From Rebecca billardiae RCC1528 (lineage: Eukaryota > Protista > Haptophyta), in contig OZ251226.1 of NCBI GenBank assembly GCA_965240325.2, positions 2,108,001-2,172,000 of the forward strand: DNA of 64,000 nucleotides, given 5' to 3'. The notes beneath the pieces are model-generated. The model did not search any database. It was given only the letters and a program-made list of their open reading frames with translations, and was not told the origin of the DNA. This document shows, piece by piece, positions 21,000 through 58,433 of the stretch. The translations under genes and the position numbers were made by a program. How positions within the stretch are numbered: the stretch's first letter is position 1; each line of letters starts with the position of its first letter.

Positions 21000-21609
21000 G
21001 CCCGCGATCTGTTTCCACTTTTCCTTGAAGCTAATGGTTACCCGGCTTCCCCGTCAAGCTGGTGGGGTTACCAACCGCTTCCCTGGCGCCAGATCAATCC
21101 TTCCATGACCTGATGATGGCGGCAGGCTGATTTCTCATCACCGTCTCGTGACGATGCGCCGACTACGGCTGACAGTCCGCAGTCCTGCCGCGGGATGCCA
21201 GGCCCAGGACAGAGGTCGGGCACCTCAGCTCACAGCTGCCGAACGGCCAACTGCCGGGCCGCGTCCCGCGCAGTGGATCAATGGCATCATCAGGCGTTTA
21301 TGATGCTGTGCCAGTAGCATCGCATCCCACTACCGTGCCCGCACACTGCATTCATGCGTAGGAGTAGTGGCGGCACAATAACACGCGCGCGGAATATGAT
21401 GCGCACGGAGGTGACGGAGCGGCCACCGACACGTCCGACAGACAGACAGTCCGCGTGACACCGCCGTGAGGCCCAGTGTGACATTTACCGTCGGAGCGTC
21501 ATTGAGTGGGGGCCTCGCAACGAGCCGCGCGGGCGCTCGGTCCTATCGGTTGGCGACCTGCTGATCGGGCGCTCTCCTTTCCCTGCCTTCTCCCCTCACC
21601 GCCCGGGAG

Positions 21610-24600
21610 TCACCCCCACGACGTTGACAGCGTCGTTGCTGAGAGCGCCGCTCGCCATCTTCTTGAACACTGACAGCAACTTGCGCAGCTGATGCAGCAG
21701 CGGCTCGACGAAGACCTCGGTAAACCGTTCACGCCACGCCACAGGCAGCATCGAGACGAGATACGCGAAGATCGCCGAGGACAGGACCGAGCCCGGCTCG
21801 ATGAGCACCACCTTGAACGCAGCCTCGATGCCCCACACCATGATCACCTGCTCACGCCACGTCCTTGGGTCGCGCACCGAGCGCTCGCCGTCCTGCGAGG
21901 ACGTGCCAAGGAGGGAGAAGGCGATGAGAAAGCAGACCAACACCAGCGCGAGGATGATCTGCACGGCCCATGCCGAGCGCAGCTTCCACATCTTCGGCCG
22001 ATTCGCCCACCAGCCCGCCGACTCGAGGTCGGCGCGCGCGAGCAGCACGCGGCGGAGCACGCGCGCGCTCAGGTCGGGGCCGCTTGCGTCCGCCTCCGCC
22101 GCGGCCTCCGCGCGCTCGTACGCCTCGAGCGCGGCTTGTGTCGCGACGTCGGGCGCGGCGATCACCACCGATGGCACCACGTCGTACCCGTCGTCGAACG
22201 GGCTGGTCGCGTACGCGACGTACGCCATCTTGACGGCGTCAGCTGGCGAGCTCGCGCCGTCAGATCGCGTGGACTGCACTCTGAAGAGAGGAGGGAGCCG
22301 CGCGGCGACGTTGGACGGCGCACTCAAGAGATCAGGCAGCCGCACGGCGACCGTGCTGGCACGGGCCACGGAGGCGGACTCGCGCCGGCCGCGCGGCTCG
22401 GCGCGGTACAGCGCCTCGAGATCCTCGGGGCTGATCGCGGGCAGCCTGAACACGAACTCCGCCTGCACAAAGCGAACGTCCGGCATCAGCCCGCTCTCGG
22501 CGGCGTGCGCCGCCTCGCCGCGGTCGTCGCGGCCGGGGGCGGGGCTCTCGTCGCCGAAGGCCGAGGGCGGCGCGAGCGCGGGGGCGGGGCTCTCGTCGCC
22601 GAAGGCAGAGGGTGGCGCGGGCGCGGGTGGGCACAGCCGGCCCATCAACGAGCGCGGCGGCGGCGCGGGCTCCGGCTCGGCCTCTGGCTCTGACGCGCGC
22701 GACCTGTCGGTCTGGCTGCGCGTCATCTGCGCGCGCTCGATATGGGCCGAGCCCGCGACAAAGAAGCCGACCAGCTGGCCGTGGAAGGTGGGGATGGCGA
22801 TGAGCGCCTGGACGGGCATCGCGACGGCGCCTGCCATGTTCGGGGGCAGCGGCGGCAGCCGCATGCTGCCGATCACCTGCACCTGGCTCTGGCGCAGCGC
22901 GCGCGCCGCCTCTCGCCGCGCCGAGCGCTTCTGCGCGCGCACGGCTTCCTCCGACTCCTGGCCCAGGCCCGCGCCAAGGCTGCTCGCTGCGCTCAGCTGC
23001 CCGCCGCGCACTCCCAGCGCGGCAGCCACGGGCGCGGGTCCGATCTGCCGCACGTTGTCCGGCCGCACGTACCGGATAGGGAACTCGGGCGCTCCGGGCA
23101 GGACGGGGAGCAAGCCGGCCGCGCCGGAGCCGTTGCCGCCGCCGCCAGCGTCGCCGACGCCCTCGGCCGCGCCGACGCCGTCGCCATCGCCGCTGCTCTC
23201 GCCTCGTGTCATCGTGGCGGCCGCGGTGCCGCCGCCGCCGCCGGTAGTCTGCGAGACAGAGTTGGTCGAGCCGCCGGGGCCGAGGCTGCGCGCTGACGTG
23301 AGGTCGCGCCCCGGCGCTGGCGGCACCTCATCCGCACGCAGCGAGTTCCGACGCGCCTCCTCGTCACGGTGGTCGTCCGGCCTCGCCTCGAGCAGCCCGC
23401 GCCTCTTCGCCACCCACTTCCACAGGCTAGGCAGGAAGAGCTGCTCGAACGGGTAGCCCGTGACCAGCCCGACGAGCACGGCGAAGACGATCTGCGTCGA
23501 GCTCTGATTCTCTGGGACGCCGAGGAAGAGCGCGATCACAAACAGCTCGAGCAGCGCAATGTTGAGCAGGCTCATCAGCCGCTGCTTGGCCTGTGCGGGC
23601 GGTGCGGTCGGAGGCGGGAAGGGTCGGGGGCGGGAAGGGTCGGAGGCGAAGACGGTCGAGAAGGGCGCGCGTGGGCGTGGCGCGAGCAGGCGGCGAGGCC
23701 GACGCGCTCGCGGCTGCGCACGCGCGAGCGTCGCCCCGTCGCACCGTGATGTTCTCGCCTGGCAGCCGCACGATCCAGGAGGTGGCCGACGACTTGGCGA
23801 GCAGCGCTGCGCCGGTCGCCCAAAGCCGCGACTTCTCCGCGCGCTGCTTCCAGAACGGCACGGACGGCTCTGTCTCGACGGCGACGTCGATGTTGTACGC
23901 GAGGCCGAAGAGCGCGAAGAAGAGGCCGAGCGTGGAGCTGACCAGCACCACGCCCCAGAAGTTGGCTTGCAGCCGCTCCGACAGGATGGCAGCCACCTGC
24001 TCCTCGTTGTCCGCATCCTCCAGCTCCTCCGTGTCGGTCGGCAGGTTCACGACGGGCGCGGTGAACGCCTCCTCGCCGCTCGCGAGGCGCTGGACGGCGA
24101 CGGTGAGGGCGACAAAGTCTGCGGGCCGGGCGTGGGCGCGCGATCGCGCGTGTGGGCAGGTGGGCGGGCGGGCCGGCACATACATGGCGGGTGAGCGCAG
24201 GCGTACGCGCGGCCGCACGAGGTCGGGAGCGGCAGCGGGCGCGCTCGCGCGCGCGACACGGCTCCGCACCGGTGAGGTGGTTGCACGCGCACTCGACCGA
24301 CGCGCCGTCCGGTGAGAGCTGCGAGCTGCAGCCCTCGGTCGACCAGAGCTGCGAGCTCTCGTTCCTGCGCGGCAGGCAGCCAGTCGCGGGCGGGTGCCGA
24401 GTGAGCGTGCGGGCGGTCAGTCGGCACGGCGGGCGCGCAGGCGCGGCGCGGCGCGGTGAGACAGCCGCGCCGTGGACGCGCGCGCACCAGAAGTGGCACA
24501 GCGTGAGCTCGTCGCACGCCGGCCCGGCGAAGCTGGGCGCGCACTCGCACGCGCCCGACGTGGCGTTGCACACGCCGCGGGACACGTCGCCGTCGGCCGC

Positions 24601-27600
24601 GCAGCTGTTGTCGGTCGAGCACGTGCCCTCCTCCTCCGCCGAGTCGCCGAGTGTGAAGAGCTGCGAGGCGGGCAGCAGCGGGATCACGATCACGAGGCGA
24701 TCTCGCGTGCCGTCGATGGCGAGCTCGGTGCCGTCCGAGGCGAAGGCGAGCGTGACGGAGAAGAGCGCCGACTGCAGCGCGCGCTGCTCGCCCAGCTCAA
24801 AGACGTCGTCCGAGTCCGCGGCGTCGCCGTCCACCTGCGAGCGCGGCACCGAGTCCACGTCACCGCTCGCGCCGCGCGGGTCGTCGTGCGTGTTGCGCTG
24901 CAGCAGCACGAGCCGCACGTCGACGCCGCCGCGCAGCGCGTCGCCGTCGCCGTCACGGTCCGCGAAGAGCGAGGCCGGGATCGTGAGCGCCGCGCCGCCG
25001 GAGCCGCCGGGCCCGGCCACGGTGGTGTTGGCGAGCTCGTCGGCGAAAGCGCGCTGCGAGCGCACCGAGACGCGCTCGGCGCTCACCTCGCGCGCCGCCT
25101 CGCCCGGCAGCACGCCGACCAGCGCGTTGCTCGCAAGCGTGGCCAGGCTCGCCTGCAGCTCGTCGTCGAGCTGCGCCGTGCTCGGCGCGAGCAGCAGCAC
25201 CGTGTTGGCGACGAGGTCGTCGGCGCGCAGCACCGAGTTCAGGCCCGCGAGCGAGTTGGCCGCGGTCGTGTCGTCGAGGCCGTCCGCCTCCGTGGACGAG
25301 AGCACGAGCGAGAGCTGGCGCACGCCCTCGAGCTGCGAGTCGGCGTTGAGGGCGGCCGGCACGGCGAGGACCGTCGAAATGGTGCCCGAGAGCTGCACGC
25401 GCTCCGCCTCGTCCTGCGCGCCGCCGGCCTCGTCCGCGCTGAGCGAGGTGACGTCGAGCAGCTCGAGCACGAGCAGCTGCGCGTCCGCGCCGTCCTCGCG
25501 CGAGACGGTGAGCAGCGTCGCGTCCGCGACCGCGAGCACCAGCTGCAGCGCGCCCTCGACGTTGCCCACGTCGAGCGCGTCGCCCGCGCCGTCGATCTTC
25601 TCGCGCGTGAACGCGGCCGTGCGGTCGTCGGCTGCGACCGGCAGCACGGTGACCGGCGTGCGCTCGACGACTGCGCCGTCAAACTGGTCGACCACGGTCA
25701 CCGTCGCGTTGTACTCGCCCTCGGGCAGCACCGCGCTCGCGCGCTCCTCCGCCGACGCGTCGGTGACGAACTGCACGAGCACGGAGCCGGGCCTCACGTA
25801 CCCGAACGTGAACGCGAGCGGCAGGTCCTCCGCATCGTCCGTCCAGTCGGCCGCCTCGTACGCAAACTCGGTGAAGGCGGGACCGGTCTCTGGCGTGATC
25901 GTGAGGCTGCCGCCGTACGGCGGCCGGTTGATCAGCACGCGCACCTCGGCGTACGAGGGCTCCTGCCCGCCGCTCACCTCGAGCGAGAGCGCGTACGTCG
26001 CGCCGGCTGTGAGCACGCCCGAGCGGAAGACAAATGTGCGCTTGCGGTCGCCCGTCGTGGTCACCGCCGTGTCGTCGGCGACATCGAGAGCAGACGCGAG
26101 GCGCGCGGCGCCCACGACCTCGGTGACCGCCCAGTTGAACTCGAAGGTGAGGTTGCCCACCGTCTGCGCGAGCGCCGCCTCCTCGTCGAGCTGCGCGGAC
26201 ACGCCGATCGCCAGCTCGGGCACGTCCCACAGCGCGTTGTACTTGGCGCGGTTGAGCGGCGACATGGTCACCTGCGGCACGTAGTCGTTGACGAGGGTGA
26301 GCGTCGCGGACTCGGAAGAGGTGCGGCCGTCGGCTGCGAACGTGACCGTGAGCTTGACCACGTACGTGCCCACGCCGCCGAGAGCCACGGTGGCGAGCGT
26401 GAGCGTCGGCGTCGCCACCGCCGAGACGTCGACGGCCGTCGCGCCGCTCACCGCCTTGGTCACCGCCCAGCTGTAGCTCAGCCCGGCGGCGGTGCCGGTG
26501 TTGAAGTCGACCGAGCCGGAGCCGTCGACGCGCGCGCTCGTCTGCGTGAGCGAGAGCGTGCGCGAGCCGCCGGAGATCACCGCACGCACGCCCTGCGGCG
26601 TGACTCTGACGGTCGCGAGCGCGAACGACGCCGCGCTTGGGTTGTCGCGCATCGACGCGTCCACGCGGAAGACGTACGTGTACCCGGCGAGCAGGCTGTA
26701 CGGGCGCAGCACGAGCGTGGGCAGCAGGCGCGCCCGCCGCGTCGGTGTACGGCACGGGCACGCCGCCCGACGGCGGCGGGTCGCCGTTCGTCGGCGCGGC
26801 GGAGAGCAGCGTCCAGTTGAAGTCGATCCGGCCGGAGAGGTCGGACGAGAAGCAGGTCGCGACCGACGCGCTCGTGCGCAGCCGCGTCGTCGCGCCCGGC
26901 CGCACCGCGCGGCTCGCGGCGCCGTCGATCGCGACGAGTGGCGCAAACTCAGAGGTACGCGTGACGGTGAATATCGCGACGGGCGAGGCAAAGCCGAGGA
27001 AGGACGAGGCACGCAGCACGAAAGCGAACGAGTCGCCCGCGGGGAGCACAAGCGCGAGCGTCGGGCCAGAGAGCTTCTTCACGGCCGCCGAGAGCGCCGT
27101 TGCCGCGTCGACCGTGAGCCCCTGCGTCGTGTCCACCGCCCAGATGTAGCTGAGCGGTCCGATGCCGGCGCGCTCGGTCACGGTGGCCTTGACGGTGACC
27201 ACCTCGTTCGGGCACGCGGACGACACGAGCGCGTTGCCGCTGAGCTGCACTGCGGGCGTGGGGCAGCCGCCGGCGCACGCGTCCGCCTGCTCGAGCGGCA
27301 CCTCCGCCGAGAGCGCGCCCGCGCACAGCGGGTTGGGGCACTGAGCGGTGGAGAGCTCTGGCTGCAGCACGTTGGCGCGGATCCCGACCGTGTCGCCCGG
27401 CCCGACGGCGGTGCGGCCGTTGAGCTGCGCGACGAGGGTGGAGTCGTCCTCCCAGTAGCACAGCGGCGCGCGCACCGCGCCGCCGCGGATCAGCTCGACC
27501 GTGCTCTCGTCGAGCACGCGCGAGCACAGCTGCAGGCCGGACATGCGCGCGCGGTCCGTCGGCTGCGCGTCGAACTGCAGCACGAGCGCGGTCGCGCGCG

Positions 27601-29284
27601 CGTTGAACGTCGCCGAGAGCAGCCGCGGCGTGCTCAGCCCCGCCGCGTACGTGAACTTGGTGTCGTTGACCGCCGCCGCGCCCGCCTCGACGTACTGCCG
27701 GCCGTTCAGCGCGACGCCCACCACCACGGTCGTGTTTGCGTCGGCGGGCGGCGAGAGCACTCGGATCTCCGTGTCGGTGACGGCGAGCGGCGCGGGCGCG
27801 ACGTCCGCGCCGAAGCGCACGCGCAGCCGGCCCTGCGGCACGCTCGGGAGCGCCCAGGTGCTCGCGTTGAGCAGCGCGCCAAAGCCCGAGCCGCGCACGA
27901 CCACCTCCGCGCCGCCCGTGCTCAGCCCGAAGCTCGGCGAGATCGAGCTCACGGTCGGCTCCTCGTAGTAGCCAAACTGCATGCCGGAGCTGGTAGTTGT
28001 GCCCGCTGCGCCGCTGCTCAGCGAGAGCTCGAGCGAGATGACGGCGGAGGCGGTGGGCGGTGGCGCGGGCAGCGTGCACGCCGCGCGGACGACGCTCGTG
28101 CCGCGCGCGCCGAGCAGCAGCGTGGCGGGCGCGACGCACGAGCCCTCGACGACGCAGCACAGCCCGTCATTGGCCAGGAGGCCGCCAAAGCCGACGCCGC
28201 TGAGCGTGACGCGCGTGCCGCCGGCCGTCGGCCCGCCGACCGGCGCGACGCTCGTCAGCGCCACGTTGCCGATGCTGTACAGCCGCACGCGCACCGCGTC
28301 GAATACGTTGAAGACGAGGTCCGCGCCGCCGTTCAGCGAGAGCCGCACGTCGTAGCTCTTGCCCGCCTGCGCCTCCGCCGCCTGGATCTCGCGGCAGACC
28401 GCCGTTGTGTTGTCCACGATCGTCGCCGGCCGCGCGAACGGCGTGACGGTGTTCTCCTTGGTGTACAGGCAGATGGCTTGGTCCGGGCCGAGGTCGAGAA
28501 AGCCCGCGCCGCGCAGCGTCACCTGCGCGGGCGCGCTCGCCGGCGACGCGGACGGCGAGCCCGACGAGACGGTCGCCGTGTACGTGACGAGCCGCGCGGA
28601 CGAGGGCGCGTACGAGAAGCCGTTCGGCGAGACCTCGACGGTGACACGGCGCACCGCCTCGCCGGCCGGCAGCGAGATGAGCGGCGGCACGCACTGCACG
28701 AGCTCGGAGGAGAGCAGCACGCCCGGCACGACGCTCTTGGCGCCAGTGCCCGTCTCAAAGCGGCAGCTCAGCCCGCCGCCCGCATCGATAAAGTCCTTGC
28801 CGAGCACGCGGATCGCGCGGCCCTCCGCGCCGTCGGGCAGCCCGAGTGGATCGACGCCGTCGACCGTCACGTTGGAGAGATCGAACCACACGAAGGCGCG
28901 CGTCGCAACGAGCGTACGCGGCGAAGAGCCGTCGTCCGTGCGCAGCTCGACCACCACGTCCGACGAGGCGCCCGTCCCGGGTGGCGTGTGCGCGGCGCAC
29001 TCAACCGCTGTCGCGCTCACGCTCAGCGCGGGCACGACGAGGGGAGGCGCTTGCGCGTCGTTGGTGCCGTTCGCGAAGAAGGCGCAGCTCAGGTTGCCGA
29101 CCTGCGCGATGGCCGGCTCGAAGCCGGCGCCGAGCAGCGTGACGGGCGTGTCGATGCCTATCGCCGCGCCCGGTGGCACGAGTGCCGAGACTGAGGCGGA
29201 GCCGAGGGTCGTCAGCTGCGCGGTGGGGAGCGCCGGCGGCGAGGGCGGGGTCGGCGGCGGTGGCGTGGGCGGCGGCGGCGGCGA

Positions 29285-29323
<39 letters not shown>

Positions 29324-29880
29324 CGACGGCGGGCTCGGCGGCGCCGGCGGCGGCGAGAAGTACTCGCAGGCCTCGCCCTCGAAGCTGAACGTCGCGTTGG
29401 AGTTGAAGTTCTTCGCCGTGCTGTCGTCGCACCCGAGGATGAGCGCTGTCGGGTAACTGAGCACGTCGATGCCGAAGAAGCCGCTCAGATCCTCCACCGA
29501 GTACGTCTTCAGCAGGGCCTCGAAGTCGACGGGCTCGCCCTGCGCGGTGAGCTGGATGATCGCGAGCACGAGCACGGCCGAGCCCGGCAGCTTGGCCACC
29601 GCCTGCATGTTGGACGGCGGCACTCCGCTCAGCTGCGAGAGCCCGTCGATGATCTCGTCGACAGTCGCATCGGTCAGCTCGGAGACGGGGCCGTCGATCA
29701 AGAGCCGCAAATAGTCGACGGTGAGCGGCGGCGATGGCGGTGGGCTCGGCGGCGGGTTCGGCGGCGGGCTCGGCGGCGGACTCGGCGGCGAGGGCGGCGG
29801 GAGTGGCTCCGTGCGCGGCGGCGGCGGCAGCATGGGCGGCGGCGGCGGCGAGGGCGGCGGGGACGGGGGCGGCGGCGGCG
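21610..29880 (-). repeat. Left arm of ~8.2 kb inverted duplication (partner ~50230-58418)
   Basis: Colinear, highly similar reverse-complement sequence including introns. Confidence 0.9.
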
Positions 29881-31100
29881 GACTCGGCGATGGCGGGGGT
29901 GGTGGTGGCCTGCGCGGCGGGCTGGGCGGCGGGGTCGGCGGCGGGGGCGGCGGTGGGGTCGGTGGCGGGGTCGGCGGTGGGGTCGGCGGCAGGCTGGGCG
30001 GTGGGCTTGGCGGCGGGCTGGGCGGCAGGTTGGGTGGCAGGCTGGGCGGCGGGCTGGGCGGCGGGCTCGGGGGCAGGCTGGGGGGCGGGCTAGGCGGCGG
30101 GCTGGGCGGCGGTGTCGGCGGCGGTGTCGGCGGCGGTGTCGGCGGCGGTGTCGGCGGCGGTGTCGGCGGCAGGCTGGGCGGTGGGCTTGGCGGCTGGCTT
30201 GGCGGCTGGCTGGGCGGCGGGCTGGGTGGCGGGCTCGGCGGCGGGGTCGGCGGCGGGGTCGGCGGCAGGCTGGGCGGTGGGCTTGGCGGCTGGCTGGGCG
30301 GCGGGCTGGGCGGCGGGGGCGGCGGTGGGCTGGGCGGCGGGCTGGGCGGCGGGCTTGGTGGCAGACTGGGCGGCAGGCTGGGCGGCGGGATTGGCGGCGA
30401 GGTCGGCGGCGGGCTGGGCGGCGGGCTGGGGGGCGGGCTGGGCGGCGGGCTGGGCGGCGGGCTGGGCGGCGGGGTTGGCGGCGGGGTCGGCGGCGGGGTC
30501 GGCGGCAGGCTGGGCGGTGGGCTTGGCGGCTGGCTGGGCGGCGGGCTGGGCGGCGGGGGCGGCGGTGGGCTGGGCGGCGGGCTGGGCGGCGGGCTTGGTG
30601 GCAGACTGGGCGGCAGGCTGGGCGGCGGGATTGGCGGCGAGGTCGGCGGCGGGCTGGGCGGCGGGCTGGGGGGCGGGCTGGGCGGCGGGCTGGGCGGCGG
30701 GCTGGGCGGCGGGGTTGGCGGCGGGGTCGGCGGCGGGGTCGGCGGCAGGCTGGGCGGTGGGCTGGGCGGCGGGCTGGGCGGCACGTTGGGCGACGGGCTG
30801 GGCGGCGGGCTTGGCGGCGGAGTCGGCGGTGGGTTCGGCGGCAGGCTGGGCGGCTGGCCGGGCGGCAGGCTTGGCGGCGGGCTTGGCGGCGGGCTGGGCG
30901 GCACGTTGGGCGACGGGCTGGGCGGCGGGCTTGGCGGCGGAGTCGGCGGTGGGGTCGGCGGTGGGGTCGGCGGCTGGCTGGGCGGCTGGCTGGGCGGCAG
31001 GCTTGGCGGCGGGCTGGGCGGCGGGCTGGGCGGCGGGCCGGGCGGCGGGCTGGGCGGCGGGGTCGGCGGTGGGCTGGGCGGCGGGCTGGGCGGCGCACCA
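29720..31100 (-). repeat. Coding minisatellite encoding extensin-like (S/T)PPP repeats, with higher-order 240-bp and 120-bp duplications
   Basis: 12-bp units. 30241-30480 repeats at 30481-30720, and the blocks at 30781 and 30901 are similar. Confidence 0.9.
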
Positions 31101-32260
31101 GCAGGCGCAGCAGGCGGCAACCCTACCGGCGGAGCTGGCGCCCCCACCGGCAGGTCTGGCGGCGCACCAGCAGGCGCAGCAGGGGGCATCCCCACCGATG
31201 GAGGCGGTGTCCCCACCGGCAGAACTGGCGGCGCACTAGCAGGCGCAGCAGGCGGTTCGTTGGCTGATGCTGCGGGTAGCTGTGTGAATGCGACCAGTAG
31301 TGAGAGCAGGAGCGTGCAGCGCGCCCACTGGCAGAATGAGAGTTGAGCGAGCGGTGCAGGGCGACTTGCTCGCATCGAGCCCCGCGTCGTGCTCGACACG
31401 TGAGGCGGGCGCATTCACGACGTGTGCGCCAGATTCTCGCGCCGGTGGCTCCGGGGCCAGCGCAGGTGATAGTGAGCTACGCCCCCCATAAAGTAAGTTT
31501 ATGACGATACTACTATACGCTATGTTTTCCAGCTTTTGGCCTGCAAATTTGGCTCATCAGCCATCAGGCTTCCCAATAACAAGAATCAGATATGACGACG
31601 TTAGTTAACTACGACTCCCATATGGTTCAAGCTACAAGTAGTGATTACAAGCGGTCTGCTTGCTTTTTATTGGTCGCCGATATGTTTGTTGATACAGTAT
31701 GTCAAGCAATTGACAATGCCAGAGGCTGCAGACCCACGCCACTATCATAATAATGACGACTATGGAGCGCTCGTTGGAACTTGAGCGGGGTGGAACTTGA
31801 AACTTGATGACCCCGCATTTCCCAGCAAAGTGCTTGTGCTTGCGCACCCTGGCAGCTGGCTGGGCTGGCACGCTCGCTCGGCACACGCTCCTGAGCGCTC
31901 GCTTCGCGGTGCGGCAGGCCTTGGGCATCAGCCCAGACAGACATGCCGCGACCGAATTACTGCGGGCCATTCGCGCACCACATCCGCGCTACATTTATTG
32001 GCGCCACATGGCCTGCGCGCTGGACGACTGAGAGAACGCCGAACCATCACCGACCACCGATCGCCCCGATTCTCCGTCCGAACTGCATGGCGAGTGGCGA
32101 CCAGAAGTGAGAAGCACGCAATCCTCGCGACAGCGCACCGCGTCGAACTGCTCGATCAGGCTCCCTGACCGGGTACTTGGAGCATGTTCAGCTAACACCG
32201 TAGCAGCAGCAGCGCTTCATCATGGTGTACCTCCACCGCCCGCGAGCTTCAAGCTTATTG

Positions 32261-38200: not shown

Positions 38201-38258
38201 GGTTGCACTCGTGCAGGCGCACGTCCAGCCCCCCGCCCGCGCCCGATCGGTCCTTCAT
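32261..38258 (-). CDS. TRPM2: TRPM2-like cation channel with C-terminal NUDT9-homology (ADP-ribose pyrophosphatase-like) domain. Exons 38258-34296, 34164-33166, 33022-32261
   Basis: MHR1/2 motifs LISVTGGAQDF, NAWVFTGG..GVMKHVG and LEPHHTHFLL. Pore WALFGDF, S6 LLLNLLIAMM, TRP helix EWQY. NUDT9-H motifs PLNPRGRTG..GRGLLGKWGPNHAADP, WAIPGGMV and YVDDPRNTDNAWMET. Spliced length ~1,907 aa. Confidence 0.9.
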
Positions 38259-47100: not shown

Positions 47101-50100
47101 GCCGTTGCCGAGCCCGCCGCCCAGCCCGCCGCCCAGCCCGCCGCCCAGCCCGCCGCCCAGCCCGCCGCCGAGGCCGCCGCCCCCGCCGAGCCCGCCGCCC
47201 TCACCACCGACCCCGCCCAGCCCGCCCTCGCCGCCGCCCGAGACGGTGCTGTCCACGCAGAAGATCTCGCCGACGGCCGGCGGCCTGAGCGCGACGCTGG
47301 CGAACCACAGCCGCTTCGGCTATCGCGTGAAGCCCCTCGGCGACTTTGACGGCGACGGCGTCCAAGACCTGATCGTGGGCGCGCCGCCAGACACAGAGTC
47401 GGGCGGCACGGCCGGCGGCGCGGCGTACCTGCTCTTCCTGAACGGCGACGGCACGGTGAAGGACGAGCGCGAGCTCACCATCGGCGGCGCCATCCAGCTC
47501 GGCCACGGCGTCGGCACGCTCGGCGACGTGGACGGCGACAACGTGACCGACGTGATGCTCGGAGACGTTTGGCAGAGCGACGGCGGCCAGTTCCGCTCGG
47601 GCGGCGCGTGGGTCGTGTTCCTCACCGCGGGCGGCACGGTCAAGGGCTCGCAGAAGATCTCGAACACCGCGGGCGGGCTGACGACCTTCCTGACCGGCAA
47701 CAGCTTCTTCGGCTCGGACGTGGCCGGTCTGGGCGACCTCGACGGCGACGGCGTGCCCGACGCGCTCGTGGGGGCGCGCGCCGCCAACCGCGCGTTCACG
47801 CTCCTGCTGAACGCGGACGGCACCGTGAAGGCGGAGGTGGAGCACACGGGCAGTGGCAACTTTGGGATGGGCGTCGCGCCGCTGGGCGACCTGGACGGCG
47901 ACGGCGTGGTTGACGCGATGGTGGGCGCGTTCCGCGACGGCAGCGCTGGCAGCAACGCGGGCGCGGCGTACGTGCTCTTCCTCAACTCGAACGGCACGGT
48001 GCGCGCGTCCCAGAAGATCGGAGAGGGTGTTGGAGGTGGCCCACCGCTGGATCCCAGCGACGTCTTTGGCACGAGCGTGGGCGGTCACGGCGTCGACGTG
48101 GACGGCGACGGCGTGCCGGACGCGATCGTGGGCTCGCCGCAAAATGGCGGCACGGCGTATCTGCTCTTCATGCGCACCGACGGCACGGTCCGGCACTACG
48201 AGCCGATCGCGAGCGGCGTGGGCGGCTTCCCGTCCGGGCTGGTCGACGGCGACCGCTTTGGCGAGGGCGTGGCGCTGATCGCCAACTTCAGCGGGGACGG
48301 GCGCACGTACGCCGCGGTGGGCGCGCCTTACGACGACGATCCTGGCACCGACGTGGGCGCGCTGTGGATGCTCGAGCTCTCGGGGTACACGCCGCCCATG
48401 CCGAGCCCGCCGCCCAGCCCGCCGCCGAGCCCGCCGCCCAGCCCGCCGCCGACCCCGCCGCCCAGCCCGCCGCCGCCGCCGCCGAGCCCGCCGCCAAGCC
48501 CGCCGCCGCCGGACACCTTCGTGTTCGGCACGTTTTTCGACGACGTGCTCAACCGCTCGACCAGCGCGATCGTCGACGCGCCCTGGGCGGCGGCCCCCGG
48601 GCCGACCGATCCGGCGGGCGTGGAGAATCGCGTGTACGGCCTCGGCGGCGACGATCTGATCGAAGGCGGCGACGCCGGCGCTGGCGTCTCGGACGGGTAC
48701 ACGGGCGGCGACGTGGTCAACTACCTCTCCGGCGGCGGCGGCAACGACACGCTCGTCGGCGGCGACGCCGGCGCCGCCGACAATGGCGGCAAGGGCGGCC
48801 TTGCGACCAATCGGCTCTACGCTGGTCCGGGCTCGGCGGACATGCTGATCGGTGGCGACGGCGGCTTCGCAAACTCGTCCGGCTCGTCGGGCGGCGACGC
48901 GCGCAACTACCTGTCCGCGAGCGCCGAGGGCAGCACGCTCGTGGGCGGCGACGGCGGCGACGGCATCAACGGCGGCGTCGGCGGCCAGGTGATCAACGAG
49001 CTGTATGGCGACGATGGCGACGACGTGCTGCGCGCAGGCGACACGGGCAACTCCATCAACGGCGGGCAGGCGTCGCTCAGTCAGACCCGCATGTACGGCG
49101 AGGGCGGCGACGACCAGTTCCACCTCGGCGTGGGCGACGGGGGGCAGAGCTGGTCCCCTTTCGGCGGCGGCACCCGCGGGTACGCGTACGGCGGCGACGG
49201 CGATGACAAGTTCTACGGCGGCCGCGCCGGCGATGGCCGCGGCGAGGTCGGGTTAGGCGCCTACTCGTACGCCTTCCTCTACGGCAACGACGGCAACGAC
49301 TACATCCGCGCCACCGACGCCGGCGACGCGCTCGGCGACGGCCACGGCGGCCGCGCGTACAACAAGGCGGACGGCGGCGCGGGCAACGACACGCTCTTCG
49401 GCGGCGACGGCGGCAACGCGTTCGGCGTCGGCGCCACCGGTGGGTACGCGTACAACTATCTGTACGGCAAAGAGGGCGCGGACACGATCTACGGCGGCAA
49501 CGGCGGGTACGCCAACGGGTCTACGTCGTACAGCGGCTACGTCAAAAACATCCTCGACGGCGGCGCGGACAACGACGTGCTGCACGGCGGCGACGGTGCG
49601 TTCGCGCGCAAAGACGCCGACGACGCCCTTTATGTAAACAACTACCTCTACGGCCGTGACGGCGACGACACCATCTACGGCGGCGACTTGTTTGCCGGCG
49701 ACGCCACGGCTGTCGGCCAGGTGTCCAACCAAATTAACGGTGCGCGCGCGCGTGCGCGCAGCCGCCACCCTACGCTCGCGCGCGCCTGAGCGCGCGCGCC
49801 CCCTGCCGCTGTCGCTGCTGCCTCCGCGCGCGCAGGCGGCGCCGGTGACGACCGAATCTTCGGCGGCACGGGGGTGGACACCGTGCGCGGCGGTGCGGGC
49901 GCCGACTACATCAACACGCTCGACGGCGGCACGGACAAGATCTACGCCGACCGATACGACACGATCGTCGCCGACCCCTTCGACATCATCGTCTGGCCAC
50001 CGAGCCCGCCGCCGAGCCCGCCGCCAGCACCGCCGGCGGGGTTGCCGCCAGCCCTCGCTCCGCCGGCCACTGCGCCGCCGCTGGGCGCGCCACCGGCAGG

Positions 50101-50205
50101 CGTGCCACCGTCGGGTGCGCCACCGTCGGGTGTTCTCCGGCCGTCACAGCCGCCGCAGCCGCCGCCAAGCCCGCCGCCCGTCTCTGTGGAGAACCCGACG
50201 CCGAA

Positions 50206-50236
<31 letters not shown>

Positions 50237-50803
50237 TCGCCGAGCCCGCCGCCGCCGCCCCCGTCCCCGCCGCCCTCACCGCCGCCGCCGCCATCGCCGC
50301 CGCCGCCGCCGCGCACGGAGCCATTCCCGCCGCCCTCGCCGCCGAGCCCGCCGCCGAGCCCGCCGCCGAGCCCGCCGCCGAGTACGCCGCCAGCGCCACC
50401 GCTCACCGTCGACTATTTGCGGTTCTTGATCAACGGCCCCGTCTCCGAGCTGACCGATGCGACTGTCGACGAGATCATCGACGGGCTCTCGCAGCTGAGT
50501 GGAGTGCCGCCGGCCAACATGCATGCGGTGGCCAAGCTGCCGGGCTCGGCCGTGCTCGTGCTCGCGATCATCCAGCTCACCGCGCAGGGCGAGCCCGTCG
50601 ACATCGAGGCCCTGCTGAAGACGTACTCGGTGGAGGATCTGAGCGGCTTCTTCGGCATCGACTTGCTCAGCTACCCGAGAGCGCTCATCGTCGGGTGCGA
50701 TGACAGCACGGCGAAGAACTTCAACTCGAACGCGACGTTCAGCTTCGAGGGCGAGGCCTGCGAGTACTTCTCGCCGCCGCCGGCGCCGCCGAGCCCGCCC
50801 TCG

Positions 50804-50842
<39 letters not shown>

Positions 50843-53800
50843 TCGCCGCCGCCGCCGCCCACGCCACCGCCGCCGACCCCGCCCTCGCCGCCGGCGCTCC
50901 CCACCGCGCAGCTGACGACCCTCGGCTCCGCCTCAGTCTCGGCACTCGTGCCACCGGGCGCGGCGATAGGCATCGACACGCCCGTCACGCTGCTCGGCGC
51001 CGGCTTCGAGCCGGCCATCGCGCAGGTCGGCAACCTGAGCTGCGCCTTCTACGCGAACGGCACCAACGACGCGCAAGCGCCCCCCCTCGTCGTGCCCGCG
51101 CTGAGCGTGAGCGCGACCGCGGTCGAGTGCGCCGCGCACACGCCGCCCGGGACGGGCGCCTCGTCGGACGTGGTGGTCGAGCTGCGCACGGACGACGGCT
51201 CCTCGCCGCGCACGCTCGTCGCGACGCGCGCCTTCGTGTGGTTCGATCTCACCAACGTGACGGTCGACGGCGTCGATCCACTCGGGCTGCCCGAGGGCGC
51301 GGAGGACCGCGCGATCCGCGTGCTCGGCAAGGACTTTTTCGATGCGGGCGGCGGGCTGAGCTGCCGCTTTGAGACGGGCACCGGCGCCAAGAGCGTCGTG
51401 CCGGGCGTGCTGCTCTCCTCCGAGCTCGTGCAGTGCGTGCCGCCGCTGATCTCGCTGCCGGCCGGCGAGGCGGTGCGCACCGTCACCGTCGAGGTCTCGC
51501 CGAACGGCTTCTCGTACGCGCCCTCGTCCGCGCAGCTCGTCACGTACACGGCGACCGTCTCGTCGGGCTTGCCGTCCGCGTCGCCGGCGAGCGCGCCTGC
51601 GCAGGTGACGCTGCGCGGCGCGGGCTTCCTCGACCTCGGCCCGGACCAAGCCATCTGCCTGTACACCAAGGAGAACACCGTCACGCCGTTCGCGCGGCCG
51701 GCGACGATCGTGGACAACACGACGGCGGTGTGCCGCGAGATCCAGGCGGCGGAGGCGCAGGCGGGCAAGAGCTACGACGTGCGGCTCTCGCTGAACGGCG
51801 GCGCGGACCTCGTCTTCAACGTATTCGACGCGGTGCGCGTGCGGCTGTACAGCATCGGCAACGTGGCGCTGACGAGCGTCGCGCCGGTCGGCGGGCCGAC
51901 GGCCGGCGGCACGCGCGTCACGCTCAGCGGCGTCGGCTTTGGCGGCCTCCTGGCCAATGACGGGCTGTGCTGCGTCGTCGACGGCGCGTGCGTCGCGCCC
52001 GCCACGCTGCTGCTGTCCTCGAGCCTCAACCCGACCGCGACGGTGCGCGCGGCGTGCACGCTGCCCGCGCAACCGCCCAACGCCTCCGCCGTCGTCTCGC
52101 TCGAGCTCTCGCTGAACAACGGCGCGGTGGGCACGACCACCAGCTCCGGCATGCAGTTTGGCTACTACGAGGAGCCGACCGTGAGCTCGATCTCGCCGAG
52201 CTTCGGGCTGAGCACGGGCGGCGCGGAGGTGGTCGTGCGCGGCTCGGGCTTTGGCGCGCTGCTCAACGCGAGCACCTGGGCGCTCCCGAGCATGCCGCAG
52301 GGCCGGCTGCGCGTGCGCTTCGGCGCGGACGTCGCGCCCGCGCCGCTCGCCGTCACCGACACGGAGATCCGAGTGCTCTCGCCGCCCTCCGACGCGAACA
52401 CGACCGTGGTGGTGGGCGTCGCGCTGAACGGCCGGCAGTACGTCGAGGCGGGCGCGGCGGCGGTCAACGACACCAAGTTCACGTACGCGGCGGGGCTGAG
52501 CACGCCGCGGCTGCTCTCGGCGACGTTCAACGCGCGCGCGACCGCGCTCGTGCTGCAGTTCGACGCGCAGCCGACGGACCGCGCGCGCATGTCCGGCCTG
52601 CAGCTGTGCTCGCGCGTGCTCGACGAGAGCACGGTCGAGCTGATCCGCGGCGGCGCGGTGAGCGCGCCGCTGTGCTACTGGGAGGACGACTCCACCCTCG
52701 TCGCGCAGCTCAACGGCCGCACCGCCGTCGGGCCGGGCGACACGGTCGGGATCCGCGCCAACGTGCTGCAGCCAGAGCTCTCCACCGCTCAGTGCCCCAA
52801 CCCGCTGTGCGCGGGCGCGCTCTCGGCGGAGGTGCCGCTCGAGCAGGCGGACGCGTGCGCCGGCGGCTGCCCCACGCCCGCAGTGCAGCTCAGCGGCAAC
52901 GCGCTCGTCTCGTCCGCGTGCCCGAACGAGGTGGTCACCGTCAAGGCCACCGTGACCGAGCGCGCCGGCATCGGCCGTCTCAGCTACATCTGGGCGGTGG
53001 ACACGACGCAGGGGCTCACGGTCGACGCGGCAGCGGCGCTCTCGGCGGCCGTGGAGAACCTCAACAGCCCGACGCTCGCGTTCAAGCTCCCTGAGGGCGA
53101 CTCGTTCACTTTCTCGCTGCGCGTCTTCTCCTTCCTCGGCTTTGCCTCGCCCGTCGCGACATTCACCGTCGCGCGCACCTCTGAGTTTGCGCCCCTCGTC
53201 GCGATCGACGGCGCCGCGAGCCGCGCGGTGCAGCCGGGCGCGACGACGCGGCTGCGCACGAGCGCGTCGGTCGCGACCTGCTTCTCCTCCGACCTCTCCG
53301 GCCGGATCGACTTCAACTGGACGCTGCTCTCCGCCGCGCCGACGAACGGCGACCCGCCGCCGTCGGGCGGCGTGCCCGTGCCGTACACCGACGCGGCGCG
53401 CCTGCTGCCAGCGCTCGTGCTGCGTCCGTACAGCCTGCTCGCCGGGTACACGTACGTCTTCCGCGTGGACGCGTCGATGCGCGACAACCCAAGCGCGGCG
53501 TCGTTCGCGCTCGCGACCGTCAGAGTCACGCCGCAGGGCGTGCGCGCGGTGATATCCGGCGGCTCGCGCACGCTCTCGCTCACGCAGACGAGCGCGCGCG
53601 TCGACGGCTCCGGCTCGGTCGACTTCAACACCGGCACCGCCGCCGGGCTGAGCTACAGCTGGGCGGTGACCAAGGCGGTGAGCGGCGCGACGGCCGTCGA
53701 CGTCTCGGCGGTGGCGACGCCGACGCTCACGCTCGCCACCGTGGCTCTCGGCGGCGTGGGCGCCTACGTGGTCAAGCTCACGGTCACGTTCGCAGCCGAC

Positions 53801-56800
53801 GGCCGCACCTCTTCCGAGTCCGCGACGCTCACCCTCGTCAACGACTACGTGCCGCAGGTGACCATGTCGCCGCTCAACCGCGCCAAGTACAACGCGCTGT
53901 GGGACGTGCCCGAGCTGGCGATCGGCGTGTCCGCGCAGCTCGACGAGGACGCGGCGCTCGCGCAGACGGTGGGCAACCTCACCTTCGAGTTCAACTGGGC
54001 GGTCACCGAGGTCGTGGGCGCCGCGCGCCTCGCGTCTGCTCTCGATGTCGCCGACGACACGGCGGTGACCACGACGGGCAACCGCAAGCCCAACTTCGTC
54101 TTCCGCTCGGGCGTGCTCACGCCCGGCGCGACGTACGCGCTCTCGCTCGAGGTGATCGGCGGGCAGGAGCCCTCGTACGCCGAGGTGCGCGTGCTGATCA
54201 ACCGGCCGCCGTACGGCGGCAGCCTCACGATCACGCCAGAGACCGGTCCCGCCTTCACCGAGTTTGCGTACGAGGCGGCCGACTGGACGGACGACGCGGA
54301 GGACCTGCCGCTCGCGTTCACGTTCGGGTACGTGAGGCCCGGCTCCGCGCTCGTGCAGTTCGTCACCGACGCGTCGGCGGAGGAGCGCGCGAGCGCGGTG
54401 CTGCCCGAGGGCGAGTACAACGCGACGGTGACCGTGGTCGACCAGTTTGACGGCGCGGTCGTCGAGCGCACGCCGGTCACCGTGCTGCCGGTCGCGGCCG
54501 ACGACCGGACGGCCGCGTTCACGCGCGAGAAGATCGACGGCGCGGGCGACGCGCTCGACGTGGGCAACGTCGAGGGCGCGCTGCAGCTGGTGCTCGCGGT
54601 CGCGGACGCGACGCTGCTCACCATCTCGCGCGAGGACGGCGCGGACGCGCAGCTGCTTGTGCTCGAGCTGCTCGACGTCACCTCGCTCAGCGCGGACGAG
54701 GCCGGCGGCGCGCAGGACGAGGCGCCGCGCGTGCAGCTCTCGGGCACCATCGCGACGGTGCTCGCCGTGCCGGCCGCCCTCGACGCCGACTCGCAGCTCG
54801 AGGGCGTGCGCCAGCTCTCGCTCGTGCTCTCGTCCACGGAGGCAGACGGCCTCGACGACACGACCGCGGCCAACTCGCTCGCGGGCCTGAACTCGGTGCT
54901 GCGCGCCGACGACCTCGTCGACAACGCGGTGCTGCTGCTCGCGCCGAGCACGGCGCAGCTCGACGACGAGCTGCAGGCGAGCCTGGCCACGCTCGCGAGC
55001 AACGCGCTGGTCGGCGTGCTGCCGGGCGAGGCGGCGCGCGAGGTGAGCGCCGAGCGCGTCTCGGTGCGCTCGCAGCGCGCTTTCGCCAACGAGCTCGCCA
55101 ACACCACCGTGCCCGGGCCCGGCGGCTCCGGCGGCGCGGCGCTCACGATCCCGGCCTCGCTCTTCGCGGACCGTGACGGCGACGGCGACGCGCTGCGCGG
55201 CGGCGTCGACGTGCGGCTCGTGCTGCTGCAGCGCAACACGCACGACGACCCGCGCGGCGCGAGCGGTGACGTGGACTCGGTGCCGCGCTCGCAGGTGGAC
55301 GGCGACGCCGCGGACTCGGACGACGTCTTTGAGCTGGGCGAGCAGCGCGCGCTGCAGTCGGCGCTCTTCTCCGTCACGCTCGCCTTCGCCTCGGACGGCA
55401 CCGAGCTCGCCATCGACGGCACGCGAGATCGCATCGTGATCGTGATCCCGCTGCTGCCCGCCTCGCAGCTCTTCACACTCGGCGACTCGGCGGAGGAGGA
55501 GGGCACGTGCTCGACCGACAACAGCTGCGCGGCCGACGGCGACGTGTCCCGCGGCGTGTGCAACGCCACGTCGGGCGCGTGCGAGTGCGCGCCCAGCTTC
55601 GCCGGGCCGGCGTGCGACGAGCTCACGCTGTGCCACTTCTGGTGCGCGCGCGTCCACGGCACGGCTGTCTCGCTGCGCCGCGCCGCGCCTGCGCGCCCGC
55701 CGTGCCGACTGACCGCCCGCACGCCCACTCGGCCCCCGCCCGCGACTGGCTGCCTGCCGCGCAGGAACGAGAGCTCGCAGCTCTGGTCGACCGAGGGCTG
55801 CAGCTCGCAGCTCTCACCGGACGGCGCGTCGGTCGAGTGCGCGTGCGACCACCTCACCGGTGCGGAGCCGTGTCGCGCGCGCGAGCGCGCCCGCTGCCAC
55901 TCCCGACCTCGCGCGGCCGCGCGCGCGCACGCGCTCACCCGCCACGTGTGTGCCCGCGCGCGCGCGCGCCCGCTTTGCAGACTTTGCCGCCCTCGCCGTC
56001 GCCGTCCAGCGCCTCGCGACCGGCGAGGAGGCGGTCACCGCGCCCGAGGTGAACCTTCCGACCGACACGGAGGATCTGGAGGATGCGGACGCGGAGCAGG
56101 TTGCGGCCATCCTGTCGGCGCGGCTGGAGACGAACTTCTGGGGCGTGGTGCTGGTCAGCGCCGCGCTCGGCCTCTTCTTCGCGCTCTTCGGCCTCGCGTA
56201 CACCATCGACGTCGCCGTCGAGACAGAGCCGTCCGTGCCGTTCTGGAAGCAGCGCGCGGAGAAGTCGCGGCTGTGGGCGGCCGCCGCGGCTCTGCTCGCC
56301 AAGTCGTCGGCCACCTCCTGGATCACGCGGCTGCCGGGCGAGAGCATCACGGTGCGTGCGCCGCGCCACACGGGGCGACGCTCGCGCGTGCGCAGCCGCG
56401 AGCGCGTCGGCCTCGCCGCCTGCTCGCGCCACGCCCACGCGCGCCCTTGTCGACCGTCCCCGCCTCCGACCCTTCCCGACCCCGACCCTTCCCGCCTCCG
56501 ACCGCCCGCACAGGCCAAGCAGCGGCTGATGAGCCTGCTCACCGTGGCGCTGCTCGAGCTGTTTGTGATGGCGCTCTTCCTCGGCGTCCCAGAGAATCAG
56601 AGCTCGTCGCAGATCGTCTTCGCCGTGCTCGTTGGACTGGTCGCGGGCTTCCCGTTCGAGGTGCTCTTCCTCGACAACCTGTGGAACTGGGCGGCGAAGA
56701 GGCGCGGGCTGCTCGACGCGCGGCCGGACGACCAGCGTGACGAGCAGGCGCGCCGGGACTCGCTGCGCGTGGACGATGCTCGCACGCCGGCGGCGCCGGG

Positions 56801-58433
56801 GCGCGGCCTCACGCTGGCGCGCTCCCTCGGCCTCTTCAGCTCGAGCGCGTCGCTCTCGCGCACGACGGGCGGCGGCGCCGAGCCGAGCGCCACGATGGCC
56901 GCGACGACGACGCGGGGCGAGAGCAGCGGCGATGGCGTCGGCGGCGGCGCGGCCGAGGGCGGCGGCGACGCGGGCGGCGGCGGCAACGGCTCCGGCGCGG
57001 CCGGCTCGCGCCCCGCCCGGAACGGAGCGGCCGAGTTCCCGATCCGGTACGTGCGGCCGGACAACGTGCGGCAGATCGGACCGGCGCCCGTGGCCGCCGC
57101 GCTGGAGACGCGCGGCGGGCAGCCGAGCGCAACGAGCAGCCTTGGCGCGGGCACAGGCCAGGAGTCGGAGGAGGCCGTGCGCGCGCGCAAGCGCTCGGCG
57201 CGGCGCGAGGCGGCGCGCGCGCTGCGCCAGAGCCAGGCGCAGGTGGTCGGCAGCGTGCGGCTGCCGCCGCTGCCCCCGAACATGGCAGGCGCCGTCTCGA
57301 TGCCCGTTCAGGCGCTCATCTCCATCCCCACCTTCCACGGCCAGCTGGTCGGCTTCTTTGTCGCGGGCTCGGCCCATGTCGAGCGCGCGCAGATCACGCG
57401 CAGCCAGACCGACAGGTCGCGCGCGTCAGAGCCGGAGGCCGAGCCTGAGCCCGCGCCGCCGCCGCGCTCGGTGATGGGCCGGCTGTGCCCACCCGCGCCC
57501 ACGCCGCCCTCGGCCTTCGGCGACGAGAACCCCACCCCCGGCCGCGACGACCGCGGCGAGGCGGCGCACGCCGCCGAGAGCGGGCTGATGCCGGACGTTC
57601 GCTTTGTGCAGGCGGAGTACGTGTACAAGCTGCCCGCGATCAGCCCCGAGGATCTCGAGGCGCTGTACCGCACCAAGCCGCGCGGCCGGCGCGAGTCCGC
57701 TGTCGCGGCCGGCGCCACCAAGATCGCCGCGCGGCTGCCTGGCTTCTCCAAGGCGCAGTCCTCGCGATCTGCCGGCGCGAGGTCGAAGCCTGCCAAGGTC
57801 AAGATGGCGTACGTCGCGTACGCGACCAGCCCGTTCGGCGACGGGCACGACGTGCTGCCGTCGGAGGTGATCGCCGCGCCCGACGTCGCGACGCAAGCCG
57901 CGCTCGAGGCGTATGAGCGCGCGGAGGCCGCGGCGGCGGCCGACGCAAGCGGCCCCGACCTGAGCGCGCGCGTGCTGCGCCGCGTGCTGCTCACGCGCGA
58001 CGACCTCGAGTCGGCGGGCTGGTGGGCGAATCGGCCGAAGAAGTGGAAGCGGCAAGTGGCGTGGGCCGTGCAGATCATCCTCGCGCTGGTGTTGGTCTGC
58101 TTTCTCATCTCCTTCTCCCTCCTTGGCACTTCCTCGCAGGACGGCGAGCGCTCGGTGCGCGACCCGAGTACGTGGCGTGAGCAGGTGATCCAGGCGTGGG
58201 GCATCGAGACGGCGTTCAAGCTGGCGGTGCTCGAGCCGGGCTCGGTCCTGTTCACGGCGATCGTCGCGTATCTCGTCTCGAAGCTGCCCGAGGCGTGGCG
58301 CGATTGGTTTACGGAGGTCTTTGTGGAGCCGCTGCTGCACCAGCTGCGCAGGCCGCTAGCCGCGCTCAAGGATATGACGAGCGGCACGCTCGGCAACGCG
58401 GTCAACGTCGTGGGGGTGGCTGCTGGGACGTAA
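41153..58433 (+). CDS. Giant polycystin-1-like surface receptor, copy B (~5,590 aa): signal peptide, 5 FG-GAP (integrin-alpha-like) propellers with SPPP linkers, RTX repeats, IPT/TIG, REJ, EGF, GPS, 5 TM
   Basis: Introns 49740-49835, 55642-55764, 55860-55980 and 56352-56513 give a continuous frame. FG...GDxDGDG..D..VGA repeats, GGxGxD repeats, REJ-like INRPPYGG...WTDD.EDLPL.F.FGY, and GPS CACDHL/TDF. PKD1-like TM motifs QRLMSLL and W...LEPG. Confidence 0.88.
41275..48400 (+). repeat. Five tandem ~1.15-kb FG-GAP propeller modules (about 41275-42430, 42721-43876, 44581-45755, 45952-47100, 47245-48395) separated by (CCGCCGCCCAGC)n linkers
   Basis: Modules 1 and 2 are nearly identical at DNA level. 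Modules 3-5 are variant or mosaic. Confidence 0.9.
48510..49995 (+). other. RTX/hemolysin-type Ca2+-binding nonapeptide repeat region within copy B
   Basis: GLGGDDLIEGG, GGGGNDTLVGG, GGAGNDTLFGG, GRDGDDTIYGG, GGAGADYI. A spliceosomal intron (49740-49835) lies inside it. Confidence 0.85.
50230..58418 (+). repeat. Right arm of ~8.2 kb inverted duplication (partner ~21610-29880)
   Basis: Colinear with copy A, including three shared intron positions. Confidence 0.9.

What the first reader, a model, noticed from the sequence alone, without database searches (positions are those of the whole stretch)
21596..58433. Head-to-head giant receptor pair with a constant core and swappable N-terminal cassettes: a candidate receptor-diversification locus
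Seen: two paralogs in inverted orientation share the 5' UTR and signal peptide (about 31260-31465 vs 41075-41260; MRASRPAPLA...VAFTQLPAASA vs MRAARPAPLA...VAFTQLPAASA) and an ~8.2-kb C-terminal core. Between these, copy A has only a Pro-rich stalk while copy B has five FG-GAP propellers plus RTX. The same PPAAPAGAP/(SPPP)n linker borders every module. Inference: the linkers act as recombination sites for module gain or loss, and crossover between the 8-kb inverted arms would flip the ~20-kb centre and exchange ectodomains between two different cytoplasmic tails. This would be a shufflon-like or antigenic-variation-like arrangement in an alga.
Basis: partly seen in the sequence, partly recalled or inferred. 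Interest (0 to 1): 0.85.

Follow-up and report, generated by a model that had tools for sequence, protein, structure and literature searches.

The report
Inverted, gene-converted giant receptor pair
A GC-rich haptophyte alga has two back-to-back copies of a giant stalked surface-protein gene, one with five propeller heads and one with none, whose shared middle has been kept alike by recombination; this is ordinary duplication and gene conversion in an undescribed protein family, with no sign of a programmed shuffling switch.

Summary
The pair is real. Copy B (41153-58433, +) is an intact 5-exon model of 5,592 aa: signal peptide, five FG-GAP modules, RTX-type repeats, Ser-Pro3 stalk, TIG, REJ, EGF, GPS, five membrane helices. 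The 8.5-kb inverted arms are 97% identical up to the GPS intron and 89% beyond it; the leaders are 82% identical. That step points to ectopic gene conversion. The shufflon reading fails: no recombinase in the window, no shared crossover site, the PPAAPAGAP motif borders only two of B's five propellers, propeller mosaics break inside modules, both copies have their own leader, and the two 'different tails' are 82%-identical paralogs. At least three more family members in the same sample have cores only 32-46% identical. Closest analogues: SIGLEC11/16 and the Saccharomyces 24-kb flip/flop region. The scan has already noted this protein family many times elsewhere in this genome, including a tandem pair with reshuffled heads.

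The parts
41153..58433 (+). Gene B model, 5,592 aa, intact; GT-AG introns 49740-49835, 55642-55764, 55860-55980, 56352-56513
   Evidence: model from sequence; no RNA evidence
41091..41260 (+). B leader: 5' UTR end and signal peptide, 82% identical to A leader
41276..48397 (+). Five FG-GAP (integrin-alpha-like) modules R1 41276-42439, R2 42722-43885, R3 44582-45757, R4 45953-47104, R5 47246-48397; 87-99% identical in DNA, mosaic
42440..48511 (+). Ser-Pro3 linkers L1-L5 (94, 232, 65, 47, 38 aa); PPAAPAGAP only in L1 (x1) and L2 (x3)
48512..49993 (+). RTX-type calcium-binding nonapeptide block, split by intron 1
50150..58520 (+). B arm of the inverted repeat: short stalk, TIG, REJ, EGF, GPS (HL|T across intron 3), five TM helices, start of 3' UTR
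21596..31375 (-). Gene A model, headless; GT-AG introns 24365-24487, 24119-24269, 23591-23744; frameshifted as assembled (1,898-aa product without GPS or TM)
31262..31440 (-). A leader: 5' UTR end and signal peptide
29723..31261 (-). A stalk (~510 aa), two PPAAPAGAP units then (S/T)PPP runs grown by internal 240-nt duplication
26731..26738 (-). 4-nt GCGG tandem duplication in A; frameshift at the position of B residue 4049 (REJ)
21504..29977 (-). A arm of the inverted repeat
24119..24269 (-). GPS intron holding the identity change-point (A 24231 / B 55898): 97.4% on the head side, 89.2% on the base side
32261..38258 (-). Single-copy TRPM2-like channel gene (SLOG, TRPM2-like, Nudix) in the centre; a passenger of any inversion
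39746..40952 (.). 1.2-kb element with perfect 64-nt terminal inverted repeats (MITE-like) 140 nt upstream of B's leader homology; absent at A

Best explanation
One member of a large pavlovophyte family of stalked REJ-GPS-5TM surface proteins was duplicated in inverted orientation, from the leader to the 3' UTR (shown: homology of leader, core and 3' UTR). The copies then came to differ in their heads. Either B gained a propeller and an RTX block or A lost them; the direction cannot be fixed. B's propeller was multiplied to five by unequal exchange, and exchange inside the modules made mosaics (shown by sequence pattern). Because the copies face away from each other 20 kb apart, the arms can pair by looping, and ectopic gene conversion has re-homogenised about 5.6 kb of ectodomain up to the GPS intron (pattern shown, mechanism inferred). 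A crossover outcome of the same events could invert the centre now and then as a by-product (inferred, untested). The protein is most likely a glycosylated rod that lifts calcium-binding adhesion or recognition domains above the cell and is cleaved at the GPS while staying anchored by five helices (inferred from domains). A is either a recent pseudogene or intact with an assembly error. Diversification is evolutionary and unprogrammed.
For: Change-point at A 24231 / B 55898 with log-likelihood gain 110 against at most 9.2 in 200 shuffles. Synonymous divergence 0.040 before the GPS, 0.113 after (Fisher p 2.6e-9), 0.245 in the signal peptide (only 33 sites); a run of 247 codons without a synonymous change. 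R5 is closer to R2 in alignment bins 3-5 (6 vs 20 differences) and to R3 in bins 7-10 (9 vs 75); incompatible site patterns are clustered, p<1e-4. No recombinase among 20 window ORFs scanned with Pfam. Three further paralogs from the same sample set are 46, 36 and 32% identical, with longest exact DNA matches of 18-21 nt against 320 nt between A and B. A+B form a short-branched clade, support 100/100. Published precedents: PMC5701461, PMC5112662, PMC9731477.
Against: Two sequences cannot separate conversion from crossover or give direction. GC3 of 93% compresses synonymous divergence, so pS and pN/pS are rough. Intron 4, beyond the step, has only 4 substitutions in 149 aligned bases, so tracts are patchy rather than one clean block. 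No reads or RNA were seen. The ~51-nt PPAG unit is truly homologous between A's N-terminus and B's L1/L2 and post-RTX segment, so that unit did take part in some rearrangement.
Confidence: 0.74

Rival explanations
1. Programmed or frequent flip/flop switch. The arms recombine within clonal populations, so B's five-propeller head is placed either on its intact base or, if the crossover falls in the 3.1 kb head-side of A's frameshift, on the broken core. That would toggle between an anchored and a released head, while the bare A rod becomes anchored in turn.
For: Geometry fits: both leaders and heads lie in the centre, both bases outside. Exact matches of up to 320 nt suffice for homologous recombination. 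Ogataea flips 19 kb through 2-kb repeats without a known recombinase (PMC5720833).
Against: Arms are 93-97% identical, not identical as in Ogataea, and keep two dense divergent patches. No silent cassette or silencing boundary is evident. No recombinase or shared site. The toggle depends on a frameshift that may be an assembly error. A distal crossover would change little, as the bases are 82% identical.
Confidence: 0.06
2. Paired receptors kept by selection. Conversion is retained in the ectodomain and resisted after the GPS so that two subunits with the same extracellular body signal through different membrane and cytoplasmic halves, as with SIGLEC11/16.
For: The identity step falls within 40 nt of the GPS cleavage codon. 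Post-GPS pN/pS is 0.86 against 0.52 before. All other coding indels keep the frame and the 1,569 codons after the break have no stop.
Against: The presumed ligand-binding tips are not shared at all, the reverse of paired receptors. A 30-nt indel in that intron can explain where tracts stop. A is frameshifted as assembled, and its base has drifted further from the outgroup (26 vs 12 sites, p 0.03). No opposing signalling motifs were identified.
Confidence: 0.12
3. Assembly artefact: A is a second haplotype or a mis-join of B, or the propeller count is wrong.
For: GC-rich, repeat-laden DNA. R1 and R2 are 99.4% identical. The frameshift is a short tandem duplication in a G/C run. No independent contig covering either arm was found.
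Against: The copies are inverted and have unrelated flanks on both sides. The centre is single-copy. Leaders differ by 18% and bases by 11%, with frame-preserving indels. Short-read contigs match the window at 59211-63060 at 100%. The frameshift alone (perhaps 40% likely an error, my estimate) or the R1/R2 duplication could still be errors without touching the pair.
Confidence: 0.08

Closest known systems
SIGLEC11/SIGLEC16 and CEACAM paired-receptor loci (PMC5701461, PMC5112662)
   Same: Head-to-head or oppositely oriented receptor paralogs a few to tens of kb apart; extracellular coding region homogenised by gene conversion; membrane and cytoplasmic part diverged; one copy can carry a 4-nt frameshift.
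   Different: There the ligand-binding tip is the converted part and the tails carry opposing motifs. Here the tips differ completely (five propellers plus RTX versus none), the membrane-proximal body is converted, and no signalling data exist.
Saccharomyces chromosome XIV 24-kb flip/flop region (PMC9731477)
   Same: A ~20-kb segment between inverted paralogous genes that are recurrently homogenised; a size and layout in which re-inversion happens without a dedicated enzyme.
   Different: There both orientations are demonstrated in populations and the 4-kb arms are almost identical. Here inversion is unobserved and it would create chimeric genes.
R64 shufflon (Rci, sfx sites, pilV; PMC11852207)
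   Same: Only the idea that inversion joins a constant and a variable part of an adhesin gene.
   Different: No invertase, no short asymmetric sites, no array of silent C-terminal cassettes; both genes are complete, and the variable part is N-terminal and lies with its own leader.
Ogataea flip/flop mating-type switch (PMC5720833)
   Same: 19-20 kb centre flanked by inverted repeats; would need only homologous recombination.
   Different: Ogataea repeats are identical 2-kb copies, and orientation decides centromeric silencing; nothing comparable is seen here.
PKD1/REJ family (sea-urchin SpREJ, polycystin-1; PMC1934368)
   Same: REJ module followed by a GPS with HL|T and membrane helices; variable N-terminal domains.
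   Different: No PLAT hit after TM1, five helices and no channel half, an extensin-like stalk, and bacterial-type FG-GAP and RTX heads. Nearest named relatives are uncharacterised proteins of Diacronema lutheri and Pavlovales sp. CCMP2436 at 32-37% identity.

Membership tests
Shufflon (R64 type) | Co-located tyrosine invertase gene | tested here: not met
   No recombinase family among 20 ORFs of the centre and flanks; intron-split genes or a gene elsewhere in the genome are not excluded
Shufflon (R64 type) | Short conserved crossover sites at every segment border | tested here: not met
   No 8-mer shared by all eight borders; only a 12-nt Ser-Pro3 codon unit shared by seven
Shufflon (R64 type) | One constant expressed part and several alternative cassettes without their own start | tested here: not met
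   Both copies have their own leader and base; no head remnant elsewhere in the window
Shufflon / flip-flop switch | Both orientations present in a clonal population | not testable with these tools
Ogataea-type flip/flop | Identical inverted repeats | tested here: not met
   97.4% and 89.2% identity; longest exact run 320 nt
Antigenic variation by gene conversion (donor-cassette type) | Archive of near-identical silent donors for one expression site | tested here: inconclusive
   Other paralogs found are 32-46% identical and too distant to recombine, but the whole genome could not be searched and their contigs break at the stalk
Gene-converted inverted paralog pair (concerted evolution) | Opposite orientation and regionally restricted loss of synonymous divergence | tested here: met
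Paired receptors | Shared ligand-binding domain with opposing cytoplasmic signalling | tested here: not met
   Heads are not shared; bases are 82%-identical paralogs; signalling not testable
PKD1/REJ family | REJ domain | tested here: met
   PF02010 E 4.5e-43 in B and 4.9e-42 in A's second frame
PKD1/REJ family | GPS motif upstream of TM1 | tested here: met
   PF01825 25.7 bits (cut-off 22.5) on A's piece; HL|T restored across the intron in both models
PKD1/REJ family | PLAT domain after TM1 and TM6-11 channel half | tested here: not met
   No Pfam hit in the post-GPS ORFs; five hydrophobic helices in B

The most novel reading that the evidence does not exclude
The 8.5-kb arms recombine often enough within clonal cultures that the 20-kb centre flips, and, because A's core carries a real frameshift, crossovers in the head-side 3.1 kb switch the five-propeller/RTX head between a membrane-anchored and a released form. 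That would be a recombinase-free inversion switch of a surface receptor in an alga.
Probability: 0.06. Interest if true: 0.8.

Novelty: new variant of a known kind. Interest (0 to 1): 0.36.

Why it matters
The locus is a compact snapshot of how this undescribed family of stalked algal receptors changes its heads: local duplication, gain or loss of whole head blocks, exchange inside propellers, and conversion of the body. It offers an easy test (orientation PCR or spanning reads) of whether gene-converted inverted receptor pairs in algae also invert. As it stands, the arrangement follows known concerted evolution, and the family itself has already been noted many times in this genome. A demonstrated orientation switch would raise the interest sharply.

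Tried and rejected
So orientation, module number, the frameshift and expression are all unchecked against reads. Word-indexed homolog searches of the REJ region, the frameshift region and the tail found no near-identical fragment from this organism (length limits apply). Nine of ten window ORFs are not in the exact-sequence collection. A single-sequence fold of propeller R1 failed (pLDDT 37) and was not used, so the propeller fold rests on Pfam and integrin-alpha hits. Rejected: linkers as specific recombination sites; different tails; a constant core across the family; A as a haplotig (unrelated flanks). The direction of head gain or loss could not be fixed, since the outgroup contigs break at the stalk. 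Seven literature searches found no paper on this family in haptophytes (most directly).
Full report
Organism. The window is about 73% GC with short GC-rich GT-AG introns. The nearest named relatives of the core are uncharacterised proteins of Diacronema lutheri and Pavlovales sp. CCMP2436 at 32-37% identity, so the source is most likely a pavlovophyte haptophyte. Short-read contigs of runs ERR14847150 and ERR14847151 match window 59211-63060 at 100%, and ERR14847149 holds an exact protein from the same stretch.

Observation. Self-comparison gives one inverted repeat of 8,509 columns, 21504-29977 against 50150-58520, at 92.9%. The leaders match over 179 columns at 82% (A 31262-31440, B 41091-41260) and nothing further upstream matches; the 3' UTRs match over 118 columns at 75%. 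Gene B, with four GT-AG introns, reads as 5,592 aa without a stop: signal peptide, five FG-GAP modules, an RTX nonapeptide block, a short Ser-Pro3 stalk, TIG domains, REJ, an EGF-like unit, a GPS with HL|T across intron 3, and five hydrophobic helices. Gene A has the same last three introns and base but only a ~510-aa stalk after the signal peptide. The centre holds a single-copy TRPM2-like gene and a 1.2-kb element with perfect 64-nt terminal inverted repeats just upstream of B's leader. These models rest on sequence alone.

A carries a 4-nt GCGG tandem duplication at about 26734. As assembled it gives a 1,898-aa product with some 350 off-frame residues and no GPS or membrane helix. Every other coding indel between A and B keeps the frame, and the 1,569 codons after the break have no stop, so the break is recent or is an assembly error. 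The 'different tails' are colinear paralogs, 82% identical. PPAAPAGAP is found in A's N-terminus (2), B linker 1 (1) and linker 2 (3) only. B's first propeller follows the signal peptide with no linker, and no 8-mer is common to all borders. The unit is nonetheless truly homologous DNA: 51 nt align between A and B linker 1 well above codon shuffles, and a diverged copy follows the RTX block. It therefore marks the ancestral top of the stalk and was carried along in some duplications, but it is not a universal crossover site.

Evidence of recombination between the arms. Identity steps from 97.4% (5,595 nt) to 89.2% (2,627 nt) at A 24231 / B 55898, inside the GPS intron; the likelihood gain is 110 against at most 9.2 in shuffles. 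Synonymous divergence is 0.040 before and 0.113 after (p 2.6e-9), and 0.245 in the signal peptide on few sites. A step at silent sites is what regional gene conversion produces (PMC5112662). Caveats: GC3 is 93%, which compresses silent divergence; intron 4 beyond the step is also well conserved, so tracts are patchy; and two sequences cannot tell conversion from crossover. Two dense patches of amino-acid change persist in the ectodomain (A 28034-28161 and 26979-27111).

Evidence of recombination among the heads. The five modules are 87-99% identical. R5 resembles R2 in the first half and R3 in the second; R4 is divergent in its first third and like R1/R2 after. Informative sites switch from a (3,4)/(1,2) pattern to a (3,5) pattern in mid-module, p<1e-4 by permutation. 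Breakpoints thus lie inside propellers. The closest relatives of the module in prokaryotic genomes are 38-43% identical, with weaker hits to integrin-alpha propellers.

The family. The protein P0001 (46% over the REJ region, same layout and similar intron read-throughs) lies on a contig of run ERR14847148, and its tail ORF also occurs exactly in ERR14847151, a run that holds this window's DNA. P0009 and P0013 (36 and 32%) come from ERR14847148 too, and their contigs begin in Pro stalks. I infer that all three are paralogs in the same organism. A and B form a short clade (100/100) with P0001 as sister, and exact DNA matches to these paralogs are at most 21 nt against 320 nt between A and B. The core is therefore constant only within this recent pair. 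Unchecked notes of this scan list many more members with RCC1, LRR, lectin, FG-GAP or no heads, one of them 9.5 kb before this window, and a tandem pair with reshuffled heads.

How it most likely works. Shown: inverted duplication from leader to 3' UTR, different heads, mosaic propellers, regional homogenisation. Inferred: loop pairing of the arms and ectopic gene conversion; unequal exchange for head number; a stalked, GPS-cleaved adhesion or recognition protein. A crossover would invert the 20-kb centre, as in the Saccharomyces 24-kb region where homogenised paralogs cause recurrent re-inversion (PMC9731477). A crossover distal to A's frameshift would put B's head on an 82%-identical base and change little. 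One in the 3.1 kb on the head side would put B's head on the broken core and A's bare rod on the intact one. That is the most novel reading left open, and it depends on two untested things: that the frameshift is real and that inversion occurs.

Comparison. It does not belong with shufflons: no invertase among 20 ORFs, no sfx-like sites, no silent cassettes (PMC11852207). It differs from the Ogataea switch, whose 2-kb repeats are identical (PMC5720833). It resembles SIGLEC11/16, a head-to-head pair with a converted extracellular region and a 4-nt frameshift allele (PMC5701461), except that here the tips are unshared. The proteins meet the REJ and GPS criteria of the PKD1 family but show no PLAT hit or channel half (PMC1934368).

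Limits. A fold of one propeller failed.

Verdict. A real, tidy case of concerted evolution between two inverted members of an undescribed algal receptor family, with no evidence for programmed shuffling. Interest 0.36; new variant of a known kind.

Noticed in passing
window 39746-40952: 1.2-kb element with perfect 64-nt terminal inverted repeats starting GAGGCC, single copy in the window, 140 nt upstream of B's leader homology; no clear target-site duplication seen; may supply or alter B's promoter.
   Followed up: partly
window 32261-38258 (-): TRPM2-like channel gene with SLOG, TRPM2-like and Nudix hits and at least two introns, between the two receptor genes.
   Followed up: partly
window 20103-20448 (-): Three ~120-nt repeats encoding EsV-1-7 cysteine-rich motifs (PF19114, E 5e-18), apparently broken across frames.
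   Followed up: partly
window 20712-20999 (+): Small ORF with a ribosomal protein bL31 N-terminal hit, probably an organellar ribosomal protein gene, 0.5 kb beyond A's 3' end.
   Followed up: partly
window 59570-60925 (+): Ligand-gated ion channel (PF00060) ORF, identical in short-read contigs of this organism.
   Followed up: partly
window 18223-19575 (+): ORF with weak MBD and HMG-box hits.
   Followed up: no
window 1986-2779 / 4697-5476 and 2925-3869: 794-nt direct repeat at 98% flanking a 187-198-nt tandem array.
   Followed up: no
window 28034-28161 and 26979-27111 (B 51966-52099, 53022-53154): Two patches of about 130 nt with 20 differences each, mostly non-synonymous, inside the otherwise 98%-identical ectodomain; either unconverted remnants or selected surface patches.
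   Followed up: partly
L001:52-7385 and L005: Sister paralog of the A/B pair in the same sample set, same layout and large cytoplasmic loop, lacking the equivalent of intron 4; its head is unknown because the contig starts in the stalk.
   Followed up: partly
window 38638-39393 (-): 252-aa basic, low-complexity ORF with no Pfam hit in the centre.
   Followed up: no
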